Assembly (NCBI RefSeq): GCF_031769215.1
Contig: NW_026782411.1
Span: 62,001 to 126,000 of the forward strand
Source: Ylistrum balloti
Lineage: Eukaryota
Length of the DNA stretch: 64,000 bases
Direction: 5' to 3'
This document shows positions 3,025-63,501 of the stretch, piece after piece. How positions within the stretch are numbered: position 1 is the first letter of the stretch; every line of letters starts with the position of its first letter. The notes beneath the pieces are model-generated. The model was not told where the DNA came from. It saw only the letters and a program-made list of their open reading frames with translations, and ran no database searches. The translations under genes and the position numbers were made by a program.

Positions 3025-3260
3025 NNNNNNNNNNNNNNNNNNNNNNNNNNNNNNNNNNNNNNNNNNNNNNNNNNNNNNNNNNNNNNNNNNNNNNNNNNNN
3101 NNNNNNNNNNNNNNNNNNNNNNNNNNNNNNNNNNNNNNNNNNNNNNNNNNNNNNNNNNNNNNNNNNNNNNNNNNNNNNNNNNNNNNNNNNNNNNNNNNNN
3201 NNNNNNNNNNNNNNNNNNNNNNNNNNNNNNNNNNNNNNNNNNNNNNNNNNNNNNNNNNNN
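3025..3260. other. Assembly gap (236 N)
   Basis: Run of N. Confidence 1.
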
Positions 3261-13809: not shown

Positions 13810-14274
13810 CGTCGTCGAAGTTACTCTGTCAGTTCTTCACGTCCCAGCATTCATGGTGCCTCTACTTCCGCCAAAGCACGTCCAGGTAGCCTTAGTCTTT
13901 CTTCTTCCGGTCCTACTAACCGATCAGTTTCAGCTGGTGGACGTGTGTCAGGTTTCGGAGCTGGACCATCTAGAACAGGGTCTCTCCAGTCAGGACTAAC
14001 CCCTAAAACTCCCAGTGGAGGGTACCAGTCCAGTACCGGGTATAGTAGCGCTGCATCTTACGGCAGTAAAAGTATAGCGGGTAGTGGTCCTAGTTATGGT
14101 GGAGTCCGGGCCGGAACTGACGTAGCTACTCTTCTAGCTGTTCCACGTGCCCGTAATAGCACTAGTGTTCACGTACCCAGTTCCGGCAGTGCCCGTGTTA
14201 GCTCAAGTGTTGGACCTAGAAGTCCTGTTGGGCGACCACCCCTGGTTGATAACACTAGAAAGCCTCCGGTCAGT
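13810..14274 (+). CDS. Internal coding exon, 155 aa, Ser/Gly/Arg/Pro-rich low complexity (RRRSYSVSSSRPSIHG...VDNTRKPPVS); putative N-terminal extension of the long FHOD isoform
   Basis: Acceptor TTTATTTTGTCTAG|C and donor AGT|GTAAGT. 465 nt open, phase 0-0, locally GC-richer than the flanks. Composition matches the giant exon at 54314. The ORF track shows only the part from 13945. Confidence 0.75.
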
Positions 14275-15129
14275 GTAAGTATGCTTGACCGCGTGGAGTG
14301 AAGTAATCCGGATATCCTTGTGCTTTCCAAGCCTTTTGTACCTTGGCGATATCGTTACGCCTAGACTCCCGTGTGAAACTGGGAAATGAGTTTTGATGAA
14401 ATTGCCCACGATTTCCTTCCCGATGTTGTCCTCCCTTGAGTGTTCAAACCATATTCTATGAAATTCCTGACTTTTCCTGCGTCACAACTCCTGGTTTAGA
14501 TCTATCCACAAAACAGACGACCTTTGACCTTGTTGTTGGTTGACTTACCTATTATTTTCTATTTCTACCATCTTTTCCCAACAGTTTTAAGTTAACCTGT
14601 TCTAGTTTTGTTTTACATGCTGTGTTTGGTTATGAACAGAATGCGAACGTTATTGCAAGGTCATCCCTGTATTTCGAATAACGACGCATATCACCATGAT
14701 AAAACAGAAATATACATAAAAATCAACTTGAAGAACAGGTAGATTCAAGCATTAGCGCTTTCATATTGTCAACATGCAAAGGTATGGTGGGTCGTCGTAA
14801 TCGTTGTAGCCGTCCTAACAATCAGTTTTGTGCGATGAATTCCTATTGCTCCATCAAACTCAAACGTCGTGCGAAGCTTCCTTGTGATATGTTACAATAG
14901 GGAGACGAGGAAGACAAATTATTTGTGTACGCTTACTTCAAAAACACTCAAACTTAAATTAGAATTTCTTGTTGAAGGCGCCTCCTTAAGATTCCTTTAA
15001 ATGGTTAATTTCAAGACAATGTCACATTTATCTTAAATGACAAAATTGTTTTTCTGCTGTTGACCTCACAAGCATGACATTAGATTCTGTGTATTCTATA
15101 CATGTACACCCTGATCTATACAGGGATGT

Positions 15130-19360: not shown

Positions 19361-20060
19361 ATTCCGTGCTTTACTAAGATGTGACTTTTGGTTACTTTGT
19401 GAGTAGGATATTGAGGTTGGCATCTGATGTAGAGTGTGTCGTATCCTTTGATGGAAATGGTCAATAAATTTCTTTATTGTTGTTTAAAGACAAGACATCA
19501 ACGATACGTGAAAATGAAATGGAATGACATGGAACGGCTCTTGTTACCTGGTTTCATAGTTCTTCGGTACATTCAGCTTCATATAAAAACGAAAACAAGT
19601 TAGTTAAGACAGAGCACAGTTAGTTCTCATAACGTGTCGACGGTCTGTTCCAGGATCTAACCACAGAACTCTATAGAGTATTACCGTTCTCGGTAAAAAG
19701 AATGACAAAGTGTTAGAATTCTTATCGAATTTAATTTAAATAAACGTGTATATCAGAAAACCGATCAGTGTAAATAAAAATTAGACTGTAAACAGCTCTA
19801 AGTATGCTTACACACTAGATATTAAGATCTTGGTGAAGGCGTGGGAGGGGAGAGAAGCGAGGGGGTATGATTGCGAGGTGAGAAAGGGTACTAATGGAAT
19901 ACACTGTATCTGTTTTGTGCACATCTACCGATATATGCAGATGGCTGAGAAAGTCGTCGCAGTGCTTGCAACACGTGTGATGCTATTTATAGAAGACCAG
20001 ACTTTTTCTATCATTTATAGAAACTGAATGTTAATACAGAAATCACGCTGTCGTTGCAGA

Positions 20061-22353
20061 TACTGAGAGTTCATTATGTCATGGGATGGTTGTAATGTGG
20101 TATAATACTGAGAGTTAATGAAGACATGGGATGGTTGTAATGTGGTATAATACTGAGAGTTAATGAAGACATGGGATGGCTGTAATGTGGTATAATACTG
20201 AGAGTTAATGAAGACATGGGATGGTTGTAATGTGGTGTAATACTGAGAGTTAATGAAGACATGGGATGGTTGTAATGTGGTATAATACTGAGAGTTAATG
20301 AAAGACATGGGATGGTTGTAATGTGGTATAATACTGAGAGTTAATGAAGACATGGGATGGCTGTAATGTGGTATAATACTGAGAGTTAATGAAGACATGG
20401 GATGGTTGTAATGTGGTATAATACTGAGAGTTAATGAAGACATGGGATGGTTGTAATGTGGTATAATACTGAGAGTTAATGAAGACATGGGATGGTTGTA
20501 ATGTGTTATAATACTGAGAGTTAATGAAGACATGGGATGGTTGTAATGTGGTAGGATACTGAGAGTTAATGAAGACATGGGATGGTTGTAATGTGGTATA
20601 ATACTGAGAGTTAATGAAGACATGGGATGGTTGTAATGTGGTATAATACTGAGAGTTAATGAAGACATGGGATGGTTGTAATGTGGTATAATACTGAGAG
20701 TTAATGAAGACATGGGATGGCTGTAATGTGGTATAATACTGAGAGTTAATGAAGACATGGGATGGTTGTAATGTGGTATAATACTGAGAGTTAATGAAGA
20801 CATGGGATGGTTGTAATGTGGTATAATACTGAGAGTTAATGAAGACATGGGATGGTTGTAATGTGTTATAATACTGAGAGTTAATGAAGACATGGGATGG
20901 TTGTAATGTGGTAGGATACTGAGAGTTAATGAAGACATGGGATGGTTGTAATGTGGTATAATACTGAGAGTTAATGAAGACATGGGATGGTTGTAATGTG
21001 TTATAATACTGAGAGTTAATGAAGACATGGGATGGTTGTAATGTGGTATAATACTGAGAGTTAATGAAGACATGGGATGGCTGTAATGTAGTATAATACT
21101 GAGAGTTAATGAAGACATGGGATGGTTGTAATGTGGTATAATACTGAGAGTTAATGAAGACATGGGATGGTTGTAATGTGGTATAATACTGAGAGTTAAT
21201 GAAGACATGGGATGGTTGTAATGTGTTATAATACTGAGAGTTAATGAAGACATGGGATGGTTGTAATGTGGTATAATACTGAGAGTTAATGAAGACATGG
21301 GATGGTTGTAATGTGGTATAATACTGAGAGTTAATGAAGACATGGGATGGTTGTAATGTGGTAGGATACTGAGAGTTAATGAAGACATGGGATGGTTGTA
21401 ATGTGGTAGGATACTGAGAGTTAATGAAGACATGGGATGGTTGTAATGTGGTATAATACTGAGAGTTAATGAAGACATGGGATGGTTGTAATGTGTTATA
21501 ATACTGAGAGTTAATGAAGACATGGGATGGTTGTAATGTGTTATAATACTGAGAGTTAATGAAGACATGGGATGGTTGTAATGTGTTATAATACTGAGAG
21601 TTAATGAAGACATGGGATGGTTGTAATGTGTTATAATACTGAGAGTTAATGAAGACATGGGATGGTTGTAATGTGTTATAATACTGAGAGTTAATGAAGA
21701 CATGGGATGGTTGTAATGTGGTATAATACTGAGAGTTAATGAAGACATGGGATGGTTGTAATGTGGTATAATACTGAGAGTTAATGAAGACATGGGATGG
21801 TTGTAATGTGTTATAATACTGAGAGTTAATGAAGACATGGGATGGTTGTAATGTGTTATAATACTGAGAGTTAATGAAGACATGGGATGGTTGTAATGTG
21901 GTAGGATACTGAGAGTTAATGAAGACATGGGATGGTTGTAATGTGGTATAATACTGAGAGTTAATGAAGACATGGGATGGTTGTAATGTGGTAGGATACT
22001 GAGAGTTAATGAAGACATGGGATGGTTGTAATGTGGTATAATACTGAGAGTTAATGAAGACATGGGATGGTTGTAATGTGTTATAATACTGAGAGTTAAT
22101 GAAGACATGGGATGGTTGTAATGTGGTAGGATACTGAGAGTTAATGAAGACATGGGATGGTTGTAATGTGGTATAATACTGAGAGTTAATGAAGACATGG
22201 GATGGTTGTAATGTGGTATAATACTGAGAGTTAATGAAGACATGGGATGGTTGTAATGTGGTAGGATACTGAGAGTTAATGAAGACATGGGATGGTTGTA
22301 ATGTGGTATAATACTGAGAGTTAATGAAGACATGGGATGGTTGTAATGTGGTA
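20061..22353. repeat. Tandem array, 45-bp unit (TACTGAGAGTTAATGAAGACATGGGATGGTTGTAATGTGGTATAA), ~51 copies, very homogeneous
   Basis: 45-bp period (20341/20386); source of the 784-aa minus-strand ORF. Confidence 0.98.
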
Positions 22354-41685: not shown

Positions 41686-42893
41686 GGTAAGAACATGTTC
41701 GTGATATCTTAACCGGGTAAGAACATGTTCATGATATCTTATTCAGGTAAGAACATGTTCATGATATCTTATTCAGGTAAGAACATGTTCGTAATATCTT
41801 AACCGGGTAAGAACATGTCAATGATATCTTAACCGGGTAAGAACATGTTCATGATATCTTAACCGGGTAAGAACATGTTCATGATATCTTAACCGGGTAA
41901 GAACATGTTCATGATATCTTAATCGGGTAAGAACATGTTCACGATATCTTATTCAGGTAAGAACATGTTCACGATATCTTAATCAGGTAAGAACATGTTC
42001 ATGATATCTTAATCAGGTAAGAACATGTTCACGATATCTTATTCAGGTAAGAACATGTTCACGATATCTTAACCGGGTAAGAACATGTTCATGATATCTT
42101 AATCGGGTAAGAACATGTTCACGATATCTTATTCAGGTAAGAACATGTCCATGATATCTTAATCGGGTAAGAACATGTTCATGATATCTTATTCGATATC
42201 TTAATCGGGTAAGAACATGTTCATGATATCTTAATCGGGTAAGAACATGTTCATGATATCTTAACCGGGTAAGAACATGTTCATGATATCTTAACCGGGT
42301 AAGAACATGTTCATGATATCTTAACCGGGTAAGAACATGTTCACGATATCTTATTCAGGTAAGAACATGTCCATGATATCTTAATCGGGTAAGAACATGT
42401 TCATGATATCTTAACCGGGTAAGAACATGTTCATGATATCTTAATCGGGTAAGAACATGTTCACGATATCTTATTCAGGTAAGAACATGTTCATGATATC
42501 TTATTCAGGTAAGAACATGTTCATGATATCTTATTCAGGTAAGAACATGTTCGTAATATCTTAACCGGGTAAGAACATGTTCATGATATCTTAACCGGGT
42601 AAGAACATGTTCATGATATCTTAATCGGGTAAGAACATGTTCATGATATCTTAACCGGGTAAGAACATGTTCATGATATCTTAACCGGGTAAGAACATGT
42701 TCATGATATCTTAACCGGGTAAGAACATGTTCACGATATCTTAACCGGGTAAGAACATGTTCACGATTTCTTAACCGGGTAAGAACATGTTCACGATATC
42801 TTAACCGGGTAAGAACATGTTCACGATATCTTAACCGGGTAAGAACATGTTCACAATATCTTAACCGGGTAAGAACATGTTCATGATATCTTA
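41686..42893. repeat. Tandem array, 30-bp unit (GGTAAGAACATGTTCATGATATCTTAACCG), ~40 copies
   Basis: 30-bp period; nearly every unit carries the palindrome GAACATGTTC. Confidence 0.98.
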
Positions 42894-43080
42894 GTCGATT
42901 TCCGTTCCCGGGTCAGACCTCTGCCAGTATAATGTATACGGGTGTGGTGTCACGTTGTTCAGGTAGTGATGACATTACAGTGTGATTGCACTGTAAAAGA
43001 CTGAGTGTCCCCTTCATCCGTGGGCACTCGTCGTCAGAACAATGATCCTAAGTATTTATTTAACGACCTTTTTGGCATTT
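42894..43080 (+). mobile_element. Degraded tRNA-derived SINE body/tail (MESC-like mollusc SINE), 5' truncated
   Basis: A B-box-like GATTTCCGTTCCCGGG is followed by GGGTGTGGTGTCA...CAGTGTGATTGCACTGTAAAA...GGCACTCGTCGTC...AACGAC. This follows the remembered layout of mollusc MESC-type SINEs; not database-verified. Confidence 0.42.
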
Positions 43081-47178: not shown

Positions 47179-48820
47179 CAGTGGTAATTGTAACAAAATT
47201 TTCAAGTACATCTTTTCATCGATATTTAATGTTGATTAATTATGAGAAAAGACAAAAAAAATGACATGAGTTGGCAAGGGAAGACAACTCTGACTCTATT
47301 GAGGAAGGCCAATGATATACTAGTTGTGAGATCGTGACTGATAATGTCACACTAGACTTTAGTACCGATGGCTGGGTACATCGCCACTCATCTCCTATCG
47401 GTTATCAACACACGAGAAGCGTTTTTTTTCCTACTAAAATATCCGTATCACTCGGGTACACCACTGTCGCTCTGTCTTGTAAAATATTACAGCCAAACCC
47501 TTCAGATTAATTTTCTTTCAAAATTTTAAGATTTATATGCGAGATATATCCTGGAACTGTTACGGATCACGCGCATTTACATGTGTTTATTTCTAGCCTC
47601 ATAACTCTCTGAGTGGTACCGAAGCCAGCACGCTACACTGAAATAGGATACATCAAAGAAAAAACGCATCCGTAACAACTCAAAAAATGCAACTTAGAAC
47701 ATCACAGAACTAGAAAACATATTTTCATAAAGCGATAGGTACGTGTTAAGTTGCTTCCAAAGAAATAATATATTACGAACAGGGATATAGATTACAAAGG
47801 CAAGAATGAGTGAGAGAAGGCAATCGAATGGGACCTGGCCCGCGTCCATCGCCATCAAGGTCAAGATTCGTCCTTGACCACGGCTTATTCTAATCTCAGT
47901 CTGCGGTACGCTTGTTGTACATTTCGCTGCATTGAATAAACGAGCTCTGTCGTTTGTTACAAGTTTTCGTGTTAAGAATGCATAAGACTTGTCTTCCGGT
48001 TTTAGTACTGCTAAAATTTGCGTCATCAATGATGGCTTTTCTGTTCAAATATGTTACGGAAACAGAACATTTAGTCCTGTCATGGCAGACAGAAATAAGT
48101 TGATGTATTTTGAACTACTAGTTTAGACAGAACTATTAGTTTAGACAGAACTACTTGACAACTGTTTATTTGTCCAACATACCTCGGAAACAGAAGCGTA
48201 CATAGTCATCTGCTGGTTAATGAAGGTAGACAGAAACATGTTCTCCTGGTCAAGATGGCGCCTATTGCGTGATATACCAATGGAATTGAAATGTGTTCCT
48301 GCTCAATAATAATTGCTATAATTGTCATACAGATGTATGAGACATGAAGGATGGCATAGATTAATACAGCTAGTTTTCTATGATTAAGTATTTCATGTAT
48401 TTACCACTATGTTTAAAACAATACGGAGAGTCTTTTATGTTTACAAAACAAGATTCGCACGGCTGTTGGTTTGGCAAGCAGTGTGAAAAACAACCCCTAA
48501 CATTTTTTTGGAAGAAAAGTTGATGTGAAACCATTCACAAAGACCATTTTTCAACCAGTCTGACTTTTTGTGTACTGAGGTACCCCCGTGCACCTGTCTG
48601 TATTAATGCGAGAAAGTTGTATCAGTTTAATTGATGATGTGGTTTAACGACTGGAAGGAATATGTTCCTCTTGTAGTTCTCACGTGCGTAACACTGAATA
48701 TTTAGAGCACCAAGACATTTCCTTAAGAAAGCGTACTTGGGATTAGAACGTTTATAAAAAATGTTGTCCATTGTTGACTGTAGAACCATGTAAAGTGGGT
48801 CTCTATTATCCAGACTGGTC

Positions 48821-50056
48821 ACTTCGTTACTTCATTATCCGGAGTCATCACTTCATTATCCGGACTCGTTACTTTATTATCCGGTCTCATTACTTCATTA
48901 TCCGGACTCGTTACTTAATTACGCGGACTCGTTACTTCATTATCCGGACTCGTTACTTAATTACGCGGACTCGTTACATAATTACCCGGACTCGTTACTT
49001 AATTACCCGGACTCCTGACTTCATTATCCGGACTCGTTACTTCATTACCCGGACTCGTTACTTTATTATCCGGTCTCATTACTTCATTATCCGGACTCGT
49101 TACATAATTACCCGGACTCGTTACTTAATTACCCGGACTCCTGACTTCATTACCCAGACTCGTTACTTCATTACCCAGACTCGTTACTTTATTATCCGGT
49201 CTCATTACTTCATTATCCGGACTCGTCACTTCATTACCCGGACTCGTTACTTCATTATCCGGACTCGTCACTTCATTACCCGGACTCGTTACTTCATTAT
49301 CCGGACTCGTCACTTCATTACCCGGACTCGTTACTTCATTATCCGGACTCGTCACTTCATTATCCGGACTCGTTACTTCATTATTCGGACTCCTGACTTC
49401 ATTATCCGGACTTGTTACTTAATTACCCGGGCTCGTTACTTCATTATCCGGTCTCATTACTTCATTATCCGGACTCGTCACTTCATTATCCGGACTTGTC
49501 ACTTCATTATCCGGACTCGTTACTTCATTATCCGGACTCGTTACTTAATTACCCGTACTCCTGACTTCATTATCCGGACTCGTTACTTCATTACCCAGAC
49601 CCGTTACTTCATTACCCGGACTCCTGACTTCATTATCCGGACTCGTTACTTCATTACCCGGACTCGTTACTTCATTATCCGGACTCGTTACTTAATTACC
49701 CGGACTCGTTACTTAATTACCCAGACTCCTGTCTTCATTATCCGGTCTCGTTACTTCATTATCCGGTCTCATTACTTCATTACCCAGGCTCGTTACTTCA
49801 TTTTCCGGTCTCATTACTTCATTATCCGGACTCGTCACTTCATTATCCGGACCCGTTACTTCATTATTCGGACTCGTTACTTCATTACCCAGAGTCGTTC
49901 CTTCATTACCCGTACTCCTGACTTCATTATCCGGACTCGTTACTTCATTACCCAGACTCGTTACTTCATTATCCGGACCCGTTACTTCATTACCCGGACT
50001 CGTTACTTCATTACCCGGACTTGTTACTTCATTATCCGGACTCTTCACTTCATTGA
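48821..50056. repeat. Tandem array, 21-bp unit (ACTCGTTACTTCATTATCCGG), ~59 copies
   Basis: 21-bp period; source of the 7-aa repeat ORF 48771-50135. Confidence 0.98.
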
Positions 50057-51816
50057 ATTATATTCGATTTGTCGTACACCGGATAGACTTATTTTCGCAC
50101 AAAAAAATGTTTACAGATTTAAACGCATCCTTTAACTTGGATTGAATCTGTAACACGTATCTATCGTCCAGACAGATCCCATGTGTTTAAGGTTCACATG
50201 TACCTTCACTGTAATGGTAGCGTATTTCAACCTTTTATATTTACGTTGAAAAATACGGAATAAGAAAATTATTTTGTCATTATAAGAAGTCCTTTTTTTA
50301 TTTGACTTCACTCTGAATGGTTTTGAAAAGCATATATTGGAAACTTTGAAGTATCCTTCCTATAACATTTCGAATAATGGATACAAATTTCTTTGACGAA
50401 AAAGATACGAATCTCCCTAACGAACAATCGTCCCGTTAGTCTATTAATACTCTATTTTTTTGTTTATTTTTGTTTTGGAAGTCACATCAGTTCGCCATTG
50501 CCATGGCGTAGTTGTTTGTATGTGACAATATCATGACGTAAACGTTATTTTTGTCAGCTTCTGGGATGGACATTCCCTCTGCCCTTCATAATGAGTAGGT
50601 GCACGATGTATAAAATCCTGTGGCTAGGATAATTGGAATCCCATGTGACCCCCAGGGGAGAGATGGAGGGAAGGGGGTACCGTGTACATACTCCCAATGT
50701 GCGGCGCACGTTGCACTCATGCTCACCCCACAGAGATAAGAGGATGGTTGTAACCCTCTCAAACTATCATCGGTAAGATTCATTGCTTCTAACCTGAGGG
50801 GCCCTCGGAGGGGGCCAAGAAATAGAACCGCGACAACTGGACAGTATTACTAAAAATGACCGTCTGATGAATACGTTTATTATATGTGATTCCTTGATGA
50901 TTTTTTACGAGTTAGTTGATGCTTATGGTTTAAATACAGGCCTTCTGTTTAATGTTTGAGATGAAGATGCACGCGCTGTATGTATCATAGGCCCAGCGTG
51001 ACTTCATACACAGGAAAGTTCCCTGATTCACCGGCTCGGGTTGCTTTAATACATACATAAACAATAGATGGCATTTCCGCGTGCATCGCACGCCCGATGT
51101 TTAGTTTGGGATATGTTTCATAATAACGAGGATGGTTTCAGTGATTCTCTCTATTTCTTAGTCAAACTTTCTCAGCTCATGCAAAGTACGTATAAAATAC
51201 GGCACCATTACTTTTACCTAGAGGATTAATTTTGTTCAAGTGTTTCTTGTGGATGTATATCTGTATGTATAGGATATTAACAGAGCACCTGGGTAAGTAT
51301 TTTTTTTCGATACGAACGAACTTTGAACAAGACACGAAAGATCTAACTGTAACCGATTTTGACAGTTTTTCATCATACACTGGACTGTGCTAACCGTAAG
51401 AATATATTGATACAGACTTTTTAGTACGTAATACGCTTTCTCATGTAAGTTACATACACGTGGCGAAAATGAAATTAAGTTTAGTGATGAAACAACATTC
51501 ATTTTTACAATTAGAATATCGTCAATTTTTTTTCAATGTGGATATGAGAACGAAATTAGAAAATTAGAAGCAAATCCCAAACACGTCCATTTATGTTACA
51601 AGGATATAATAATATACAATAAACAAAGTTTATTTATACTTTTCATACTTATCAGTACACAGACACAGATAAACTATTACGTCACCAAACCTAGTATTAC
51701 TAGGTGAGCATCATCAGCATTTTTCATCCTTTTCAAACCAAGAAGTACATTACCTGATTGTAAATGACGTAACTACACTTCCCTAATATGCCAGGTCAAT
51801 TAGTTTGATGGATAAT

Positions 51817-51989: not shown

Positions 51990-53900
51990 GACGTACAGTG
52001 AAATGATGACGGATGTTTAAAGTGAAATGATGACAGATGTATACAGTGAAATGATGACGGATGTTTAAAGCGAAATGATGACAGATGTGTACAGTGAAAT
52101 GACGACGGAAATGTACAGTGTAATGTTGACGGATGTGAATAGTGTAATGTTGACGGATGTGTAAAACGTAATGTTGTTGGATGGGCAGATTGTAATGTTC
52201 ACGGTTGGATATTTAGAATGCAATTTTGACGGATGTTTAGAATGCAATGTTGACGGATGTTTAGAATGCAATGTTGACGGATGTTTATAATGCAATGTTG
52301 ACGGATGTTTAGAATGCAATGTTGACCGATGTTTAGAATGCAATTTTGACGGATGTTAAGAAAGCAATTTTGATGGATGTTAAGAATGCAATTTTGACGG
52401 ATGTTAAGAATGCAATGTTGACGGATGTTTAAAATGCACTTTTGACGGATGTTTAGAGTGCAATGTTGACGGATGTTTAGAATGCAGTGTTGACGGATGT
52501 TTAGAATTAGAATGCAGTGTTGATGGATGTTTATAATGCAATGTTGACGGATGTTTAAAATGCACTTTTGACGGATATTTAGAATGCAATGTTGACGGAT
52601 GTTTAGAATGCAATGTTGACGGATGTTTAGAATGCAATGTTGACGGATGTTTAGAATGCAATGATGACGGATATTTATAATGTAATGTTGACGGATGTTT
52701 ATAATGCAATGTTGACGGATGTTTAAAATGCACTTTTGACGGATATTTAGAATGCAATGTGACGGATGTTAATAATGCAATGTTGACGGGTGTTTATAAT
52801 ACAATGTTGACGGATGTTTATAATGCAATGATGACGGATGTTTATAATGCAATTTTGACGGATGTTTATAATGCAATGTTGACGGATGTTTAGAGTACAA
52901 TGTTGACGGATGTTTAGAATGCAATGTTGACGTATGTTTATAATGCAATTTTGACGGATGTTAAGAATGCAATTTTGACGTATGTTTATAATGCAATTTT
53001 GACGGATGTTAAGAATGCAATGTTGACGGATGTTTAGAATGCAATGTTGACATATGTTTATAATGCAATTTTGACGGATGTTAAGAATGCAATTTTGACG
53101 GATGTTAAGAGTGCAATGTTGACGGGTGTTTATAATGCAATTTTGACGGTTGTTTATAATGCAATGTAAGCGGATGTTTATAATGCAATGTTGACTGATG
53201 TTTAGAATGCAATGTTGAAGTATGTTTATAATGCAATGTTGACGGGTGTTTATAATGCAATTTTGACGGATGTTTAGAATGCAATGTTGACGGATGTTTA
53301 GAATGCAATGTTGACATGTTTATAATGCAACATTGACGGATGTTTAGAATGCAATGATGAAGGATGTTTATAATGCAATGTTGACGGATGTGTACAATGT
53401 AATGTTGTTTGATGGGCAGAGTGTAATGTTTACGGTTGTATAGTTTGTAATGATCACTGGTGTGTAGGCTGTGATGTTGACGGATTTTTAGAATGCAATG
53501 TTGACTGATGTTTAGAATGCAATGTTGACTGATGTTAAGAATGCAATGTTGACTGATGTGTACAGTGTAATGTTGACGATGTGTATTGTGTTATGTTGAC
53601 AGATGTGTACAGTGTAATGTTGATGGGTATGTATTGTGTTATGTCGACAGATGTGTACAGTGTAATGTTGACGGTGTGTATTGTGTTATGTTGACAGATG
53701 TGTACAGTGTAATGTTGACGGTGTGTATTGTGTTATGTCGACAGATGTGTACAGTGTTATGTTGACGGTGTGTATTGTGTTATGTTGACAGATGTGTACA
53801 GTGTAATGTTGACGGATGTGTAAAGTGTAATATTATAGGATATGTAGAGTGTAATGTTGAAGGATGTGTAGTTTGTTATGTAGACGGATGGATAGAGTAA
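51990..53900. repeat. Tandem array, 24-bp unit (AATGCAATGTTGACGGATGTTTAG), ~75-80 copies, with a ~47-bp dimeric subarray at ~53560-53830
   Basis: 8-aa repeat ORFs (HSKHPSTL) on the minus strand; dimer period 53653/53700. Confidence 0.96.
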
Positions 53901-54313: not shown

Positions 54314-57300
54314 CTTTACGACAACATGGGGTCCGGGAAGGGCTATGGCGGTTCTACCAGTAGGTATGGGAGTGGTGTAGGAACCAGTAGTTATCTCAGT
54401 CCGTCGTACGGCTCGCAAAACAAAAGCGGGTCGTCTTACGGATCACCAACAAAAACCTACTCATCAGGCTACCAACAACCCTCATCATCCGGGTCTCGAT
54501 ACGGTTACGGCGGCGGCTCCGTCCGAGACCGGATACAGAAAATTTCGTCAGCGGAGGCAACGCGCAACACGGGTAAAGATACCGGAACTAGTATGTATAC
54601 GCCGTTAAGCAGTAGAGGGACCACACAAACAAGGGGAGATCACTATGGAGGCGGTGGTGGATATGACAAATATTCGTCACGGAGTGCGGGATCAGACCCT
54701 TATGGAAGCAAATCTGGATATTTGTCAGATTATGGTGGGAGTACAAGGTCTTATAGTTCATGGGATCGAGGGTCGTCAAGGTCAGGTCGCAGTTACGGAA
54801 CCGCAAGTCGCGAGACTTCGCCTGTGAGTCAGCGATCGTCACGCTACGAATACGGAACAAAAGCTGCCACCCCGTCTCCGTACACCACTTACAAAAGTAG
54901 TTCAGAGGTCTCGCCACCAGTTAACAGGAAGTACGACCGCCAGGTGTCGCGATCATCGGACGTCGAGTATTCTGCTAGGGATAGAGGTGACAGATATGAG
55001 AGGAGGCGGTCGTCACGTGACTACATTCGGCCGCCTCCACGGAAGAAAGTTTCCGTGTCTTCGGACAGTGACGAGGACGACAGTGCGCCCGAGGCGGAAA
55101 AAGAAGGCTTCAAGGGTCGGTACCTTATATCGAGGGGAACTTCGCCAATGCCTGAAAATGAAGCCCCGAAACGGGATGCACGTTACAGAAAGGACAAAAA
55201 GTCAGTTTCGCGGACCAAACGTATAAGGCCACTGAGCAACAGAGACTCGCGGCGTGAGAGTCGGTATAGGGACTATCGAAACCCTACTCTTGTCGATTGT
55301 TCTACTCAAACACATATGGACCAACCCACCTCCCGCCGGAGTCGGCACTCGTCTGGCAGCTATGGCGGCGAGGCGAGCGGTGACCTAAGGGAAAAGGCGG
55401 CTATGGCTGCCTTGGCCATGATGGATAGTGGAGGTGGAGACGGCAAAGATGACTCATTCTATAAATATCGCGATAAGTTTGACAAAAACAAACAGCCAAT
55501 GTCACCAGGTTATAACGCAACGGATAGTCCGAGGAGCAAACGATTTTCGTATCGCGATACATCAGCTAAAGATGAAAGTTTGGGAGAAATTCCTCCAGAG
55601 AAATCATGGCGTCAGTCTGTGTACGGAACGTCTACTCCAATGAAGAAACCTGAGGAGGAGGAAGTTCCAAGGCGACGACGCCGGCAGCAGGCTAATGTAG
55701 AGCCTGACTATGACAACGCTGAGGAGGATGCAAGACCAAGTTCACGTCGTGGTGAGAGACGTTCCCAGGGGTCAGACAGAGATCGACGCTCACAGCGGGA
55801 GATGGCTCAGGATTACAGTCGATCCAACTCCCGAGATAGTCTTCTCGACGACAAACCCGCGAGGAGACGAAGGCACGGCAGTAAGGAGTTGCTGGATGCA
55901 CCTCCTGAACCAGAAGTTATTGTCCACTCTCCGGAAGAGGTTCCGGTACAGCGACGAAGACGGCATGGAAGTAAAGAACTTCTAGATGAACCTACTGACC
56001 CCTTGACTCAGGAGACCATTTCGTTAAGAGATAGCATTGAGAAAGTACAACAATGGAAGCAAAACCTACCAAATCCAGACCCGTACTATGAAGACCATCC
56101 TCCACAGTCTCAACCGCCGACTCGACATCTCGAAACTGGCTTCCCAAGGAGTGATTCGGGCGAGTATTTTTCTGCTCATGATTATCCAGTGAATCCGAAT
56201 TCCAGGCCAAATGAGAATAAGGTCATGTCTCCAGAAAGAAGCAGGGGTAGAGACTCTCGTGGGTCTGGTAATTACGGTCGTGAGCAGGAACATCCTCCTT
56301 ACCGTGATCACTCCCCGGGGAGAAGACAGTATCGACGTGATGATTCACACGATAACGTGTTTTCTGGTGACGATGACTTAGATGGACATTACCGCAACAA
56401 AGACTATCGCAAGTCAGAACTAAATAGGGGCGAAGGTGAGCACTATGCGATCGCTCGAGATGAGTCTCCCAACAGGATGCGTCGTTCACACAGACCACCC
56501 TCTGGTGACGGTGCGCGTCGTTTGACGCGAGAAGGATCTAGGGAAGACAATCTAGATGATAGAAAATCAAGGCGAGATGATTATGATCGCGGACACACGA
56601 GCGACAGCTCTCAGTTTGGATTTAATAGAGAAAGTTCGCCAAATAGACCACATTCGCAGAAGAAGCATGGCAGCAGGCCAAACTCTCGGGAGGGCATGCT
56701 TGACGACAGCCGTGTTCGACGAAGCAACTCACGTGAGGGCATGCTCGACGAGGGAAAAGTGCGACGGAGCAATTCTCGTGAGGGAATGTTGGATGAGGGA
56801 AAAGTACGACGAAGCACTTCTCGTGAGGGCATGTTGGATGAGGGGAAAGTGCGACGGAGCAATTCGCGAGAGGGGATGTTGGATGATGGGAAAGCACGAC
56901 GTAGCAACTCGCGCGAGGGCGTTTTAGAGGAGAAGATTGTTGAGTATCCTCCCAGTTACAGTCGGCCAGGACAGCTTGCCATCTCAAACGAAAGTTTGGC
57001 GCACATGAGCAACTCGGCGTCCGCCGGATCCATTAACTCGGTTGTCCCAGATGACGGCACACTCCACGCGACGAAGTCACCTAATTCTGTAACATCAAAC
57101 GAAGGACTTCACTCACCCGTGTCCCAGTCTCGTCTCCACGCCCCGTCTCCAGGGGCCAACAAAGGACTCCCAGACCTGGTGCCCGGAGGACCCAAGACAG
57201 GACCGGAAGGTAAGGATCAAAAGCGTCAGTCACAACGCTACGTCCGCCGTACTAAAAGTGGATACATTGGCAAAGTACAAGATATTGACAGGTTTCTTGG

Positions 57301-57437: not shown

Positions 57438-59041
57438 GTAAATACTTGCCTGTGCTTTGTGCAAAAGTTATGACGTCATACATGGTTTGGTGGCTGTGTT
57501 GTGGCCTAGATGTCTTGGCGGCAGAGTTTTTATTGTTTAACTGAAATAATACCATTTGTTGTTATTACAGCTTGTCTGGTATGAATAGGATAGCATTACT
57601 ATGTTTTCATTTAATCTTTTTATATTGTGGCTTATGAAAGTTTTATTTATAAATGATGACGTCATGACTGTTTTGTGCTGCTTCCGCTTCTACTTGTGCT
57701 AACACTGAATTTCTACTTACTCTCTCTACCATGGTAAAGCTTCCCCGACGTCCGGGGGTGGGGGAGATTTCATAACAATATGTCTAACATCGGTTAGTTA
57801 GCGTCGTGTCTTAGTATTAACCAATTAGTTTAAAAAGGAATGAATGCTTACTTCATTTACACTTTTGGATTTCTGTGAATGATAATTCACACACTAGATA
57901 CAATTCGGACCACTCTAAATCAAGTTATATTTCAAAGTTTAAGAGGTTTTTTTTCGGTTTGTCTCTTTTAAATATCTCATAATGGACATTCTGCATATGT
58001 TTCTGTCATTGTAGATCTAAAATAATCTATGAATTATATTAACGATAAAAAAGGAAATTTCATTTATAATGCGCGTATTTATATATCTTCACATGGTCTT
58101 ATCGAACAACGATAGCAATACTTATTACTACTCAAAAGATGCCACCTTTCACAAATCATTAAACTTACAACCACCAAAAAAAATGTAAAACAAAATCATC
58201 ACCGTGTGCTTTGCATACCCAGAGTGTGGCACCTCCAGTCCTGCATGTTAGCAGTTGTTTTTATTTACATCCGTAGTTGATGAAACCAACTTGCACCAAT
58301 TGACTTCATCAGTCCCCATGGTTAAAACTAATAATAGCTAATAGAATACGATAGGCGGTGACTAACATTCCGACTCCCTTCCCTGTACAGCCAAGTATTG
58401 TCCTATGTCCGTGTGACCGTTGGTTTCGGTGGCTGTTTTCTCCTTGGCGGTTTGTTATATTGAGCTGTTGTGGTTTAAGTAAAGAAGTCAATTGTAGCTA
58501 TTTAACCGCAAGAATGTTGAGATACAGTTTTTAAGCTTTTGACTAATAGAAAAAAGTTTTCTCAGCTGTGTGTTATATCAGCATGAACGTTATCTTTATC
58601 AACGTTACATCACGATGGTGGCCGGTCCATTTACAGGTTGGTCATTTTTATTTCATGTATATGCAAAAAAACAATTTATGCCTAAAATTTGGCCGTCTAA
58701 ATCGACATGCCGTAGCTGCTATGTGATTAAAATCCATGCAAAACTTAAATACTATATTATTGCTTCTAAATATAGACAGTAGCATGGTCAACATCGCTGG
58801 CTTTAATTAGTATACTACGCATATCCTGTCAATAGGACCTGTTTTGTAAACATATTATTAGAATTATTTACCGGGAGGAAATTCTGTTTGATAGAGGATT
58901 GTTTTATATGGCTTTGTCGCAATGGTTACAGGTTAATTTGGAGAAAATTTCAGTACTTATGACCACGTGTAAAAAATAATTTTGTGGGTAAACTTTGTCA
59001 ACATACATTGATGTTCTCGTCTGATTACGCCTTCCCTCCAG

Positions 59042-59361
59042 AAGAAAAATTGGTGGACATTGAGGAGCCCAAGGGTGGACAGTCGATTTTGTCGACGCGT
59101 CCGTCAACCTCCAGGAGGAAAACGGAATCCGTGACGTCACCAGTGTCACAATCGGGGTCGACTGGGCAGCAAATGTTTAACGTCCTCAAACGGAACAAGG
59201 GTTCAGTAACTATCACAGATATCCTTGACCTTTGCTATGGCCGGAGTCAAGGTTCAGGAAAGGTCATCAGAGTTCCAGGAGTCACGGAGTCGGACTATAG
59301 TTTTAAAGGATATGACACCGTTAACGAGCTTCTCGAGAGCATGAACGTCAACGTGAGAAAG
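59042..59361 (+). CDS. Internal coding exon (EKLVDIEEPKGG...GYDTVNELLESMNVNVRK); last isoform-specific exon before the shared FHOD exon
   Basis: Acceptor CCTTCCCTCCAG|AA is phase 1 and matches the phase-1 donor at 57437 (G|AA = Glu). Donor AAG|GTGAGT is phase 0 and matches the acceptor at 63377. Confidence 0.88.
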
Positions 59362-61039
59362 GTGAGTTAGTTTATACTGTTGATAGATATTGTTTGTTCT
59401 AACATAACATGTTCAAGATGAACTTCAGTGAACTTTATGACTTTTGTTGAATGCTTGTGGACTGTTTTTTATGATGCAAACAGTGTAATTAATCCGTTGG
59501 CTCGGTTAATCGCGTCAATAATTTCAACGTTAGTTCCTGTTGCTAAGATATTTTTCATACAGTCTTTAGCAAATTTCAACGAATTATCACCACAAGTCAC
59601 ACGATTGAAATACGTGAATCCTAACTGGGGGTCACTTGCCAAGAGATTTGGGATCAAACAATAAACACACTTAAAACAATAATTGGTATCCACTGAGCTC
59701 GGGAGAACCAAAGAATTTTACGGCACTTGAAAATCGGAAAATTTAGCGACAAAAGAAAAATGGAATAGTTTAGTATAAATGAAGGTTTTTGATAAACCAA
59801 ATGAAGTGAGGCAACATATCAATTTTTTGCGTTTTCAATCAACTTCTTAAAACCTTGCAAAAGGTATATCACTTGTACAAAACAACGATAGCAGGTTAAC
59901 TTTTAACAGCATCCGTTGTTGGATTTTAGACCAAGGGAAATAACTCTTGTATGATTGTGTGATTCTCGAGTTACTTCCCCTATATCAATGTTCATACATT
60001 CAGTGTCGATCATCTTCAGTTACTTATTTATTTATTTTGGTATGGCAACGATCATCGTTTAATTCGATCTACCCTCGATATTCTCTGGTGCTGTAGAAAT
60101 ACTGGTATATTTGTAAATCAATAGTCGCAATATGTAACTAGATTCTTTTTTTCTGTGGACTACTTGTGAAATTATGAACAACCTTGGGTAACCGTCTACT
60201 ATGAAGGTTTGTTTTCTATGCTCACGGTTAACCGTTCCGATGACCTAACAAGCTTAAAAAAATATTAATAAAAGTATATGATAAATCTATATGGTTGACT
60301 GTCTGAACTCAGCATGATTTTTTGTCCTATTCCGGATGACATTATAGGGTCATATGTATACATAACCGAACATCCCTGATTAGTCTCCAACAGTAACAAT
60401 AAGTCTTTGTGAAACGGTTTCATTTTGACATACTTAATAATATGATGTGAAGAGGTCCCTTTATGAGAGTATCCGCTTCAAAACAAACTATTGTGTTGAT
60501 GTTTTTATAGTATAGATAACGGCATAAATTGCACGCCAAATAACAAGATGCTAGTTATTGTCATGTAAAAATACATGCGTACCGTTTTTATTAAATTTTA
60601 TTATATTTTACGACATATATTTGACGTAAATGTATTTTATGTATTTATGGCATACTTGAAATAGTCTTTTAAGTCCGTGATTAAACAAAGTAAGTTTTTT
60701 CAATGTCCTTGACTTAATACTACTCTAGTATTTAGGATTTAATTAAGAATTTCGGTGTGAAGTTCTAGCACATTTTTTTTTTCAACACAAACTTTATTGT
60801 ATAAATATATACCAATGGATGAGATAACAGGCATTGCCTATATAAACCTTCTCCATTTGTGGTTTATCTATATCAGGAGTGATTATAAGTTATCTAATTA
60901 TAATGTTTTCATGATTATATTTCACTAACAGACACTCACTCATCTTTCACATGTGTTTTCGTAAAACGCATTTTTTTTCTTATCGTCCGTATAACAAATC
61001 AAATTGAACCAACTCGTGAAAATACTAATTAATTTATTC

Positions 61040-61329
61040 CGAGTTACCTGTCTGCTACTCCCCCGCCTGATTGCGGCTTCCGCTGTGGTTCCGAGTGAAT
61101 CATCCCACATCTTTTTTTATGTTATCGTGATTAGCCTGAGTGATGATAACAGAATTTCCGAGTCAGCCGCTGCAACGGCCGGTTTATCGCCTCACTGTGG
61201 CGTGCCACTCCGCCGTGAGCGTTTCACCCGCAAGGATGTCTAGTTTCACCTGTTCACCTGGTGGCGTATGAATATGCAAGTGAAGGGTTCAGGGGTCAAC
61301 TCGGCGTGCTGTCAGTAGCACATTAAAAC
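61040..61329 (+). promoter_or_regulatory. CpG/GC-enriched probable promoter and 5'UTR of the short FHOD isoform
   Basis: Local CpG enrichment relative to the AT-rich flanks. In-frame TAA at 61324-61326, then strong Kozak context AAAACATGG. TSS not determinable. Confidence 0.5.
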
Positions 61330-61494
61330 ATGGCGACGTTTATGTGTAGAGTGCAGTACCTGGATGATACGGACCCTTTTGCGAGTACAAATTTCCCTGA
61401 ACCTACGCGTCCACCAAATTTTTTGTTTCACATCACCGTTCCTCTGATAAGTCAGATTGGTGGTGTACACAAACTTTTAGGAGCCCCACACAAA
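61330..61494 (+). CDS. FHOD: FHOD-family formin, first coding exon of the canonical (short) isoform; N-terminal half of the GBD
   Basis: MATFMCRVQYLDDTDPFASTNFPEPTRPP...QIGGVHKLLGAPHK closely matches the vertebrate FHOD3 N-terminus as recalled (MATLACRVQFLDDTDPFNSTNFPEPSRPP...QLAGVHRLLQAPHK). Donor AAA|GTAAGT, phase 0. Confidence 0.97.
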
Positions 61495-63376
61495 GTAAGT
61501 GAAGTTAGGCGCTGTGCCACCTGCTCGGAGATTCACATGTGTGTAAACAAAACCTTGGGATTTTACGTTACCTTTATTTTCTCCTCAACAAACACGGGAT
61601 TAAGCTGTTGACACCTCTGATCGGAAATGAATTCGATAACCTGGATATATAATGTTTTAATTGTAGCAATGTAATGTGTATAATTCCGTTGGTAAAAGGC
61701 TAGCGTGCCGGTAAAGAATTTAAGAATCAGCTGATCCCTACAGATAACAGACCTGAGAGGCGGGTACACCTGTGCTGATCAGCCTCTGCATTATTTGAAG
61801 GGAGATAGAGATTAATGTGTATTTTATTTGTCCTTTATATAATTTGATTGTTGAATTTCGTAGATGATTTAAACATATTTTTTTATTTACAATTTGAATT
61901 CCACTGAAGTAAGTTATGGGAGCTACTAATACTATGAAAAAGTCTGATATTGGAACATCATTGCACATATGTTAGATTTGTCAAATAGGGTTTCCCTGGA
62001 ATGTATTGGATTGATAATATCAAAATCATTGAAGTTCAAAGTAAATTATTAGATGTATCTAAGGTAAAAATATCTGAGTTTAGTTTTAAAGTTTTATCTA
62101 CTTTCTTTTTATTCTGATAAGCATCTTCTGTTAATCACTAATGTTAGACAGCTCTAAACAACCATGGGATGTGATACACATGTAATGACTTAGGAGCATA
62201 TGTGATGTAGTGGTTTATTGTGATGATAATTAAATGCTGCAGTGGCTTTAGAATGAACAAGAATAAGATAGCAGTGTTTTGTTATTGGCTCAGACTTACA
62301 AGTACTAGCTCTTCTCTTATCAGTTCTGTGGTATGAGGGTACTTCCTAAGTAACTAAGAATACACAGTTGTTTTCTCCGTCTGTATCTTTTGAACATGTA
62401 TTTTCAATGGAACTGCGTAGTAGCAACAAGTTGTTGATAGATTACAAACATAAAACTCTAAAAATAATTCAGTCTGCTTACGTATATAAAATTAAATCAT
62501 ATTAACTGAAATGACATGTATGTACCACACAGCACTGTTTCTATAAATAGATAACGTCTCACTGCTATTGCAGATGATTTGGTCACTTTTATTACCTCTT
62601 AACATATTCATTCTGGACGACGTTATAATTGAACATATTGTATGATTCATGGTTAGCAGTGTTATTTTTATCTTGTTTATGTTTCAAGTTTGTATATATA
62701 AATACATTAATCTGTGTGACGTGTGTTGGCAGTTGTATAAAGAACAATTTTGTTCACACCACTACACAATACATCATAGATGTTTAATAAATGCTACTCT
62801 TCACAAGAATTACATGCCAACCTATTCATAGAATCATAGCCATTTGCTTTTAAGGAGGGGAGCATTTTACATCAGCCAACTTAACAATAAAATATTTTAA
62901 TTTGATAACAATCTCTAACTGAAGTTTAAGTGTACATATGATACAGTGATTTTTGTTGGATTTTGTCTGGTGAGTCCGGAGCACCATTTCCATAATTTTG
63001 ATGAGTCTACTTGTAAAGAGTTAAAGCAAGTCCCACAGGAAAAGCATGAGTCGAAAACAAAAATAATTGGGTCACAAGTATCACTGTAATATACTATGGG
63101 AGCAGTAGTTTTTGTAGGATTTTTCCTGGTGAATCCCATTTCCAAACTTTTGATGAGTTCAGTTACAAATAGTTATAGTGGGTTCTTAAAATTTGAGCAT
63201 CACAGCATAAGCATGAATCCATGACTCAAATATTTGAAACCCAAATATCACTGAAGGGTATTATTACTGTGAAACAATTTTGGTACTTTATATATTAAAG
63301 ATATTGAACTTTGAACAAATAGATAGATGATGACTATAATTATTTAACTTTCTCATGATTCTTTTGATTTTACTAG

Positions 63377-63501
63377 CTTGAGGACTGCGCTCTACAGATA
63401 TATCGTTATCACAATGGCTCCCAGGGAGACTATGGGACATACTTGGATTTGGAATCCACCGTAGATGAACAGGCTGACGAACTTGAGGGCTTCCAAGACC
63501 A
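63377..63501 (+). CDS. FHOD: FHOD-family formin, second (shared) coding exon LEDCALQIYRYHNGSQGDYGTYLDLESTVDEQADELEGFQD
   Basis: Acceptor TTTTGATTTTACTAG|CTT is phase 0 and donor CA|GTAAGT is phase 2. Matches FHOD3 LDDCTLQL..NGAYLDLEATLAEQRDELEGFQD as recalled. Absent from the ORF track. Confidence 0.97.

What the first reader, a model, noticed from the sequence alone, without database searches (positions are those of the whole stretch)
59255..63420. Possible split ubiquitin-like GBD with swappable N-terminal halves encoded by alternative exons
Established: the FHOD1 GBD adopts a ubiquitin superfold (Schulte et al. 2008). Here that region spans the 61330/63377 exon boundary. The long isoform would lose the canonical first half (MATFMCRVQY...HKLLGAPHK). 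Seen: the alternative exon ends in an ordered-looking segment, KVIRVPGVTESDYSFKGYDTVNELLESMNVNVRK|LEDCALQIY. It also ends in Lys at phase 0 and has a strand-strand-helix pattern. YDTVNELLESM loosely recalls ubiquitin SDTIENVKAKI, and RKLEDCALQI sits where IPPDQQRLIF does. Inference: the alternative exon may rebuild the fold with a different beta1-beta2-alpha1 surface and so change GTPase or partner specificity by exon swap.
Basis: inference. Interest (0 to 1): 0.7.

Follow-up and report, generated by a model that had tools for sequence, protein, structure and literature searches.

The report
Scallop formin isoform swaps half its GBD
A scallop FHOD formin gene makes a long isoform that replaces the first half of its ubiquitin-like N-terminal domain with a long extension ending in a small module conserved across molluscs, but structure prediction and profile comparison give no support for that module rebuilding the ubiquitin-like fold.

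Summary
The window is from Ylistrum balloti, inside an FHOD formin gene. The canonical first coding exon (61330-61494, 55 aa) encodes Pfam Formin_GBD_N positions 2-52. The exon starting at 63377 encodes positions 53-88. An upstream exon (59042-59361) ends AAG|GTGAGT in phase 0. In RefSeq isoform X2 (P0048, near-identical over its length and 100% across the large exon and the shared exon) it is joined directly to the LEDCALQ exon.

The last ~68 aa of that exon form a module conserved in bivalves, gastropods, cephalopods and a chiton. It always abuts the same junction, and it occurs once in this genome. A 7.2-kb intron-free contig from a Mytilus-like bivalve carries the junction as one open frame.

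- Two AlphaFold2 runs, using MSAs that hold no canonical first-exon sequence, show no beta strand. The module and the junction come out helical, and the rest of the GBD has low confidence.
- Profile comparison finds no similarity to the canonical half.
- A PDB profile search returns no ubiquitin-like chain.
- Amphioxus, spider, scorpion, tick and horseshoe-crab isoforms swap first exons at the same point without any such module.

Most likely the long isoform lacks a canonical GBD fold and carries a different targeting region. A rebuilt beta-grasp is not excluded (about 0.17).

The parts
13810..14292 (+). Upstream coding exon of the long isoform (P0048 aa 2-162). It follows an AG acceptor, so the start codon lies further upstream.
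   Evidence: tblastn of P0048 on the window, 98% identity; acceptor read
54314..57208 (+). Large exon of the long isoform (P0048 aa ~176-1140). It is Ser/Arg/Asp/Glu-rich with no Pfam domain, and holds several islands conserved across molluscs. Donor GGAAG|GTAAGG.
59042..59361 (+). Last long-isoform-specific exon (P0048 aa ~1141-1247). It ends in Lys, phase 0, with donor GTGAGT.
59158..59361 (+). Conserved ~68-aa mollusc module (P0048 aa 1180-1247), directly abutting the junction. Single copy in this genome.
61330..61494 (+). Canonical first coding exon of the short isoform (55 aa), encoding the first half of the ubiquitin-like GBD/SRBM. It is skipped in the long isoform.
   Evidence: Pfam PF18382 positions 2-52, E 9e-22; 3DAD residues 17-67; 87% identical to the Mytilus short-isoform exon
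63377..63501 (+). First exon shared by both isoforms (LEDCALQIY...), encoding the start of the second half of the GBD.
   Evidence: Pfam PF18382 positions 53-88, E 3e-12

Best explanation
This is alternative first-exon (alternative promoter) use in the single FHOD-type formin gene of a scallop. The short isoform starts at exon 61330-61494 and has the complete ubiquitin-like N-terminal domain (GBD, now also called SRBM). The long isoform starts more than 45 kb upstream. It skips that exon and attaches about 1,250 mostly low-complexity residues, ending in a 68-aa module conserved across molluscs, directly to the shared LEDCALQ exon. Shown: the exon structure, the junction, the conservation, the single-copy status, and the lack of detectable relationship to the canonical half. 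Inferred: the module does not restore the beta-grasp, so the long isoform lacks a canonical GBD/SRBM. The FH3/DID, FH1 and FH2 domains are intact, so actin assembly should be kept, and autoinhibition too if the untested C-terminal DAD is present. What changes is localisation or partner choice, through the extension and its terminal module, as described for the Drosophila long Fhos isoform.
For: Gene model: P0048 maps onto the window with the predicted junction, 100% across the large exon and the shared exon. The FH2 exons lie downstream on the same contig. Conservation: the module was found only in mollusc FHOD long isoforms, always at the junction, and once in this genome. Transcript evidence in a relative: Logan contig SRR13891787_7446 (7207 nt) encodes 2007 aa as one continuous frame across module|LEDCALQ. 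No rebuilt fold: AlphaFold2 on P0048:1168-1562 (mean pLDDT 79.9) and on the compact piece 1176-1335 (mean pLDDT 65) both give only helices. In the larger piece these are at residues 13-24, 31-38, 67-73 and 78-93, and the last spans the junction. pLDDT is below 50 for the KVIRVPG stretch and for residues 96-120 of the remaining GBD, while FH3 is above 90. With low-confidence stretches trimmed, the match to FHOD1 (6XF1_D, Z 27.0, rmsd 1.0, 221 residues) starts at model residue 85, about at the junction. hhalign of the module against canonical exon 1 gives probability 0.1%, and there is no alignment confidence upstream of the junction. Comparative: amphioxus (72-74 aa), spider (28 aa), scorpion, tick and horseshoe-crab isoforms join unrelated N-termini at the same junction, and a module HMM finds nothing in the seven of them that were scanned. 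Literature: Drosophila Fhos has a 63-residue short N-terminus or a long one that targets Z-discs (PMC5061545). Human FHOD1 lacking 93 N-terminal residues stays autoinhibited but loses stress-fibre localisation (PMC12858348).
Against: The structural negative rests on prediction with shallow MSAs (43 and 53 rows). No canonical-isoform control could be run under the same conditions. AlphaFold2 is least confident exactly where strands would be needed. Conservation has an i,i+2 pattern typical of strands at V29/I31, I49/V51 and F61/Y63 of the aligned piece. Length variation falls in the putative hairpin loop. The module runs up to the junction with no linker. All of this fits structural continuity with the downstream half-domain. 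No RNA data were available for this species, and no short-isoform protein of this species was retrieved.
Confidence: 0.55

Rival explanations
1. The last ~34 residues of the module (KVIRVPG...FKGY...NELLESM...RK) form beta1, beta2 and alpha1. They complete the ubiquitin-like fold with the shared beta3-beta4-alpha2-beta5, giving a domain with a new surface. The upstream helix-loop-helix would be an add-on.
For: Conserved hydrophobics alternate at I49/V51 and F61/Y63 and are followed by an amphipathic helix. Indels fall between these elements. The module abuts the junction with no linker in every mollusc. AlphaFold2 is unsure (pLDDT <50) of these segments rather than confidently placing them elsewhere.
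Against: Neither AlphaFold2 run shows a strand. The module has no profile similarity to the canonical half or to any ubiquitin-like PDB chain. Fold searches of the compact model give no beta-grasp match, best Z 4.8. Other phyla tolerate junction partners that cannot complete the fold.
Confidence: 0.17
2. Fold switch, reading the AlphaFold2 model literally. The module and the first ~13 shared residues (LEDCALQIYRYH) form one small helical domain. On this reading the segment that is strand beta3 in the short isoform is a helix in the long one, and the rest of the GBD is disordered or extends the first FH3 helix.
For: Helix 78-93 spans the junction with pLDDT 87-89 in the 395-residue run and 73-77 in the compact run. 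The former beta5 region is modelled as an extension of the following helix.
Against: AlphaFold2 tends to draw amphipathic segments without partners as helices. The MSA is shallow. No known fold matches. The assignment of this segment to beta3 rests on homology to 3DAD and not on a check made here.
Confidence: 0.15
3. The module is a degenerate, non-calcium-binding EF-hand-like pair that acts as an autonomous protein-binding domain.
For: A profile search of the PDB hit only KChIP4, calsenilin and KChIP2 EF-hand loops plus exiting helices. KKG.VTI.D.L.LC.K matched at E 0.03-0.04, with a weaker second match of F.GY.T..E.L. AlphaFold2 gives helix-loop-helix for residues 13-38 at pLDDT 79-87.
Against: No Pfam EF-hand model hit any of the 26 members at E<=1. 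Loop positions 1, 3 and 5 are Leu/x/Lys in the first loop. The second loop has no entering helix (IRVPG instead) and is polar at position 8. Fold searches show no EF-hand match.
Confidence: 0.08
4. Annotation artefact. The upstream exons belong to a separate gene, or the junction is a gene-prediction artefact.
For: Several databases hold split models that end at the module (Elysia, Lottia and others). No RNA run is available for this species.
Against: The exon ends in an open frame at a consensus donor in the same phase as the acceptor. The junction is modelled in more than 30 mollusc species. It is present on an intron-free 7.2-kb contig. The module is never seen apart from FHOD.
Confidence: 0.03

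Closest known systems
Drosophila Fhos (knittrig) short and long isoforms (Shwartz et al. 2016, PMC5061545; Bechtold et al. 2014, PMC4601495)
   Same: Two promoter-specific sets of 5' coding exons are joined to a common FHOD body. One gives a short N-terminus of about 55-63 residues, the other a large extension with no known domain. In flies the long form localises differently (Z-disc) and is the functional one in flight muscle.
   Different: The mollusc extension showed no BLAST similarity to the chelicerate extensions; no insect sequence was in hand. It ends in a conserved 68-aa module that was not found in seven non-mollusc proteins scanned with a module HMM (tick, horseshoe crab, scorpion, spider, amphioxus long isoforms; annelid and gecko canonical forms). 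The literature calls the extension Neoptera-specific and draws the GBD as common to both forms. Here the swap point lies inside the GBD.
Human FHOD1 N-terminal domain, GBD/SRBM plus FH3 (PDB 3DAD, 6XF1)
   Same: The canonical scallop exons align to FHOD1 residues 17-67 and onward. The FH3 part of the long-isoform model superposes at rmsd 1.0 over 221-224 residues.
   Different: The long isoform has no counterpart of FHOD1 residues ~14-67. No N-terminal swap with a structured replacement has been described for FHOD1 or FHOD3; only predicted truncated transcripts are mentioned (PMC12858348).
Ubiquitin-like beta-grasp domains
   Different: For the long-isoform junction no strand is predicted, no profile similarity is found, and no structural match appears.

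Membership tests
FHOD-subfamily formin (the gene) | N-terminal Formin_GBD_N (PF18382) | tested here: met
   Exon 61330-61494 matches profile positions 2-52 (E 9e-22) and exon 63377- matches positions 53-88 (E 3e-12).
FHOD-subfamily formin (the gene) | FH3_FHOD1-3 (PF24959) and FH2 (PF02181) downstream | tested here: met
   P0048 carries PF24959, PF18382 and PF02181. FH2 exons lie on the same contig at C554:168995-171574. The FH3 part of the model superposes on 3DAD/6XF1.
FHOD-subfamily formin (the gene) | C-terminal DAD with polybasic region | not tested
   The C-terminal exons were mapped but the DAD motif was not examined.
Ubiquitin-like beta-grasp (long-isoform junction) | Mixed beta-sheet with beta1-beta2 hairpin, alpha1, then beta3-beta5 | tested here: not met
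   DSSP on two AlphaFold2 models shows no strand of 3 or more residues. This is prediction only. Confidence is below 50 in the segments concerned, and no canonical control was run.
Ubiquitin-like beta-grasp (long-isoform junction) | Sequence or profile similarity of the module to the canonical first half or to ubiquitin-like proteins | tested here: not met
   hhalign probability 0.1%. No alignment confidence upstream of the junction. No ubiquitin-like chain among PDB hits at E<=10.
Ubiquitin-like beta-grasp (long-isoform junction) | Structural match of the model to beta-grasp structures | tested here: not met
   Foldseek gave no hit at E<=0.001. The VIA wide search had a best Z of 4.8 to unrelated helical proteins.
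EF-hand pair (the module) | Match to EF-hand family models | tested here: not met
   No Pfam EF-hand hit in 26 members at E<=1. The only hits are borderline PDB matches to KChIP/calsenilin loops, E 0.03-0.04.
EF-hand pair (the module) | 12-residue loop with acidic or amide ligands at positions 1, 3, 5 and 12 | tested here: not met
   Read from alignment A3. The first loop has Leu/x/Lys at positions 1/3/5 and keeps only Gly6, Val8 and Asp12. The second keeps Asp1, Gly6 and Glu12 but has Lys/Arg at position 5.
Fhos-type long/short isoform architecture | Alternative 5' coding exons joined to one common exon, with a short N-terminus of ~55-63 aa or a long extension | tested here: met
   compared with PMC5061545.
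Fhos-type long/short isoform architecture | Homology of the long extension to the arthropod extension | tested here: inconclusive
   No BLAST or HMM similarity to tick, horseshoe-crab or scorpion extensions.

The most novel reading that the evidence does not exclude
The shared segment at the start of exon 2 (LEDCALQIYRY) is structurally bistable. With the canonical first exon it is strand beta3 of a ubiquitin-like domain. With the mollusc module it becomes part of a small helical domain, or else the module supplies a non-homologous beta1-beta2-alpha1. Either way, alternative promoter choice would switch the fold, or rebuild the surface, of one domain. The swap point inside the domain would date back to before the protostome-deuterostome split, since it is seen in molluscs, chelicerates, flies and amphioxus.
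Probability: 0.3. Interest if true: 0.75.

Novelty: new variant of a known kind. Interest (0 to 1): 0.42.

Why it matters
FHOD formins build sarcomeric and stress-fibre actin, and their N-terminal domain decides where they act. Three points here were not found in the papers searched. First, the long/short isoform switch known from flies cuts through the middle of the ubiquitin-like domain. Second, the same cut point is used in molluscs, chelicerates and amphioxus. Third, molluscs have placed a conserved, single-copy 68-aa module exactly at that point; it is shared by chitons and conchiferans, so it is presumably ancient. This contradicts the published view that the N-terminal extension is specific to neopteran insects. 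It also gives a concrete fragment to test for fold completion, fold switching or simple loss of the domain. If the domain is simply lost, the finding is an ordinary case of alternative promoters giving different targeting regions.

Tried and rejected
1. Complex prediction (ESMFold2) with the module (P0048:1176-1247) as one chain and the rest (1248-1562) as the other scored 0.01 against a mark of 0.34. The verdict was 'no answer', so it is not used as evidence either way.

2. RNA support in this species. The only public run holding the exon (X1) proved to be genomic contigs that also cover the introns. It shows no splice joints and gives no information on expression.

3. The protein-atlas search on the module plus remaining GBD gave a best score of 0.80 to unnamed bacterial clusters, which is uninformative.

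4. Top phmmer 'hits' with 10-18 stretches (P0001, P0006, P0013, P0015, P0018-20) are repeat proteins; the two examined in Pfam (P0001, P0006) are bacterial SprB-repeat proteins. Each of their stretches scores about 0-15 bits, mostly under 8. They were rejected as summed noise.

5. A word-indexed search with the module region of the oyster protein reached only oysters and Pinctada, because of the tool's sensitivity limit. The wider census came from searching with the shared GBD/FH3 region.

6. A search for a short-isoform protein of Ylistrum using the Mytilus canonical exon did not list one. This is not evidence of absence. The exon in the window is intact and 87% identical to the Mytilus one.

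8. The search of earlier findings near this place returned nothing.
Full report
**What is there**

The window is G000:C554:62001-126000 of a 648-Mb genome. A RefSeq protein from Ylistrum balloti (P0048, LOC132557517 isoform X2, 2461 aa) has a longest contig of 452,495 nt, the length of this contig. It maps exon by exon onto the window and the sequence downstream of it, at 100% over the large exon and the shared exon. The mapped exons are:
- 13810-14292
- about 54314-57208
- 59042-59361
- 63377-63501
- about twenty further exons, reaching the FH2 domain at C554:168995-171574

The gene is an FHOD-type formin. P0048 carries Pfam Formin_GBD_N, FH3_FHOD1-3 and FH2.

**Checking the observation**

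- The canonical first coding exon is 61330-61494 (55 aa, donor AAA|GTAAGT, phase 0). It matches Pfam PF18382 positions 2-52 (E 9e-22) and human FHOD1 residues 17-67 in PDB 3DAD/6XF1.
- The next exon starts at 63377 after a clean acceptor and matches PF18382 positions 53-88. So the exon boundary falls inside the ubiquitin-like domain.
- The upstream exon 59042-59361 ends AGA AAG|GTGAGT, that is Lys in phase 0.
- P0048 reads ...NVNVRK|LEDCALQ..., with canonical exon 1 skipped.

**Is the segment conserved?**

A phmmer scan of 1.84 billion representative proteins with the last 106 aa of the exon gave 24 hits. Seven are repeat proteins; the two examined in Pfam are bacterial SprB-repeat proteins. 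Each stretch in them scores about 0-15 bits, mostly under 8, so they were discarded.

The other 17 are real. Those with names are Crassostrea, Physella, Sinanodonta, Elysia, Lottia and Batillaria.

Searching with the shared GBD/FH3 region gave a census of what precedes the junction. More than 30 mollusc species have the same ~68-aa module directly before LEDCALQ or LDDCALQ. They include bivalves (among them the protobranch Solemya), gastropods from Patella to pulmonates, Octopus and Argonauta, and the chiton Liolophura.

In 26 aligned sequences five positions are invariant and seven more are at least 90% conserved. Mean column identity is 56%.

It starts at QQM..L..KG.V.I.D.L.LC, passes through a variable loop to .I.VPG, then an acidic variable loop to F.GY, and ends in an amphipathic stretch with GVDV.K.

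The module occurs once in this genome. The rest of the 1,250-aa extension has further islands conserved across molluscs.

A 7,207-nt Logan contig (SRR13891787) encodes a 2,007-aa Mytilus-like long isoform as one continuous frame across the junction. For a gene with this many introns, that means a spliced transcript.

For Ylistrum itself no RNA run was available. The one run found is genomic.

**Does the module rebuild the beta-grasp?**

Two AlphaFold2 jobs were run with MSAs that hold no canonical first-exon sequence, so that canonical first exons could not bias the result.

*Job 1* used P0048:1168-1562 with 43 rows. Mean pLDDT was 79.9 and pTM 0.77.
- FH3 has pLDDT above 90.
- Helices lie at residues 13-24, 31-38, 67-73 and 78-93 of the piece. 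The last spans the junction, so VRK-LEDCALQIYRYH is drawn as a helix.
- pLDDT is 79-89 for residues 11-40 and 61-90.
- pLDDT is below 50 for residues 42-56 (the KVIRVPG stretch) and 96-120.
- There is no strand.
- The former beta5 region is drawn as an extension of the next helix.

*Job 2* was a compact piece, P0048:1176-1335, with 53 rows. These included shared-region sequences from other phyla, cut at the junction. It gave the same helices at lower confidence (mean pLDDT 65) and again no strand.

Structure comparisons agree with this picture:
- Foldseek and VIA align job 1 to FHOD1 over FH3. 3DAD_B gives 224 columns at rmsd 1.0. 6XF1_D gives Z 27.0, rmsd 1.0 and 221 residues, from model residue 85 on.
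- The untrimmed alignment to 3DAD_A reaches back to model residue 67 at rmsd 3.2.
- The compact model has no Foldseek hit at E<=0.001. The best Z in the wide VIA search is 4.8, to unrelated helical proteins, with no ubiquitin-like or EF-hand entry.

Sequence comparisons also find nothing:
- hhalign of the module profile against a canonical exon-1 profile gives probability 0.1%.
- With the shared half attached, the alignment has no confidence upstream of the junction.
- A profile search of the PDB at E<=10 returns no ubiquitin-like chain.

**Caveats on the negative**

- The MSAs are shallow.
- AlphaFold2 is least sure exactly where strands would have to be.
- The conservation pattern at V29/I31, I49/V51 and F61/Y63 alternates as in strands.
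- Indels fall where a hairpin loop would be, and there is no linker before the junction.

I put the literal AlphaFold2 reading, in which the shared segment becomes helical, at about 0.15.

**Comparative context**

The same junction is used with unrelated N-termini in several other lineages:
- amphioxus (72-74 aa)
- a spider (28 aa)
- a scorpion
- a tick (3,211-aa isoform)
- a horseshoe crab

A module HMM finds nothing in the seven non-mollusc proteins it scanned.

The fly gene has a 63-residue short N-terminus or a long one (PMC5061545). So isoforms without the first half of the domain are widespread, and most cannot complete the fold. That lowers the prior that molluscs need to.

The published statement that the extension is specific to Neoptera (PMC4601495) does not hold for the architecture. 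The mollusc and chelicerate extensions show no detectable homology to each other.

**Likely mechanism**

Human FHOD1 lacking its first 93 residues remains autoinhibited, because DAD binds FH3 only. It loses stress-fibre localisation and bundling (PMC12858348). The domain binds nesprin spectrin repeats rather than Rac (PMC10192571).

In flies the long N-terminus sends Fhos to Z-discs and is the form needed in flight muscle (PMC5061545).

By analogy, which is inference, the scallop long isoform keeps actin assembly and autoinhibition. It exchanges the GBD/SRBM localisation function for one carried by the extension and its terminal module.

**A weak lead on the module**

The only PDB profile hits are EF-hand loops of KChIP4, calsenilin and KChIP2 (E 0.03-0.04). 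Residues 13-38 are predicted helix-loop-helix. Against this:
- Pfam EF-hand models do not hit.
- The ligand positions are not kept.
- The second 'hand' lacks an entering helix.

This is a lead only.

**Verdict**

The exon swap and a conserved ordered module are real, and the module as such was not found described in the papers searched. The proposed rebuilding of the ubiquitin-like fold is not supported by the available predictions, but it is not excluded.

Noticed in passing
window 20060-22353, 41686-42897, 48824-50054, 52002-53890 and about 20 more arrays: The >40-kb intron between the long-isoform exons is packed with minisatellite arrays of 21-60 bp units. Examples are 45 bp x 51 copies at 97% identity, 24 bp x 79 and 21 bp x 59. 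They produce long spurious ORFs (for example 48771-50135, 454 aa) and local GC-skew peaks.
   Followed up: partly
window 56717-56920: A 45-nt tandem repeat of about 4.5 copies lies inside the large coding exon. It encodes a repeated 15-aa unit (RRSNSREGMLDEGKV-like).
   Followed up: no
window 54668-54739, 55118-55627, 55952-56098 (P0048 aa ~294-317, 444-613, 722-770): Besides the terminal module, the otherwise low-complexity extension has several islands conserved from scallop to gastropods, cephalopods and chiton. One is 69% identical to Biomphalaria over aa 722-769. None has a Pfam match.
   Followed up: partly
P0091/P0101/P0144 (amphioxus), P0083 (spider), P0082 (scorpion), P0080 (tick), P0087 (horseshoe crab): Alternative N-termini are joined at exactly the same point, before [LI][ED]DC.LQ, in deuterostome and chelicerate FHOD genes. 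So the swap point inside the GBD looks ancient. Tick and horseshoe-crab sequences share a short Q-P-x-x-x-Q-G-x-I motif near the junction.
   Followed up: partly
P0008 (Elysia), P0010, P0023 (Lottia), many Logan/ENA fragments: Many database entries are split or truncated gene models that end at the module and read into the intron (...K followed by V from the GT donor). The long FHOD isoform is therefore mis-annotated as a separate upstream gene in several molluscs.
   Followed up: partly
P0069 vs P0075 (Babylonia), P0066 vs P0076 (Nucella): In these caenogastropods FHOD proteins lie on two different contigs. In Babylonia both carry the long-isoform module; in Nucella one carries the module and the other starts with the canonical exon. 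This suggests a gene duplication in that lineage.
   Followed up: no
window 3025-3260: A run of 236 N (assembly gap or masked stretch).
   Followed up: no
window 57600-63370 versus run X1: The one public run holding this region is genomic. It differs from the window by many SNPs and small indels in the introns, about 1 per 100 bp. That is consistent with another individual or haplotype of the same species.
   Followed up: no
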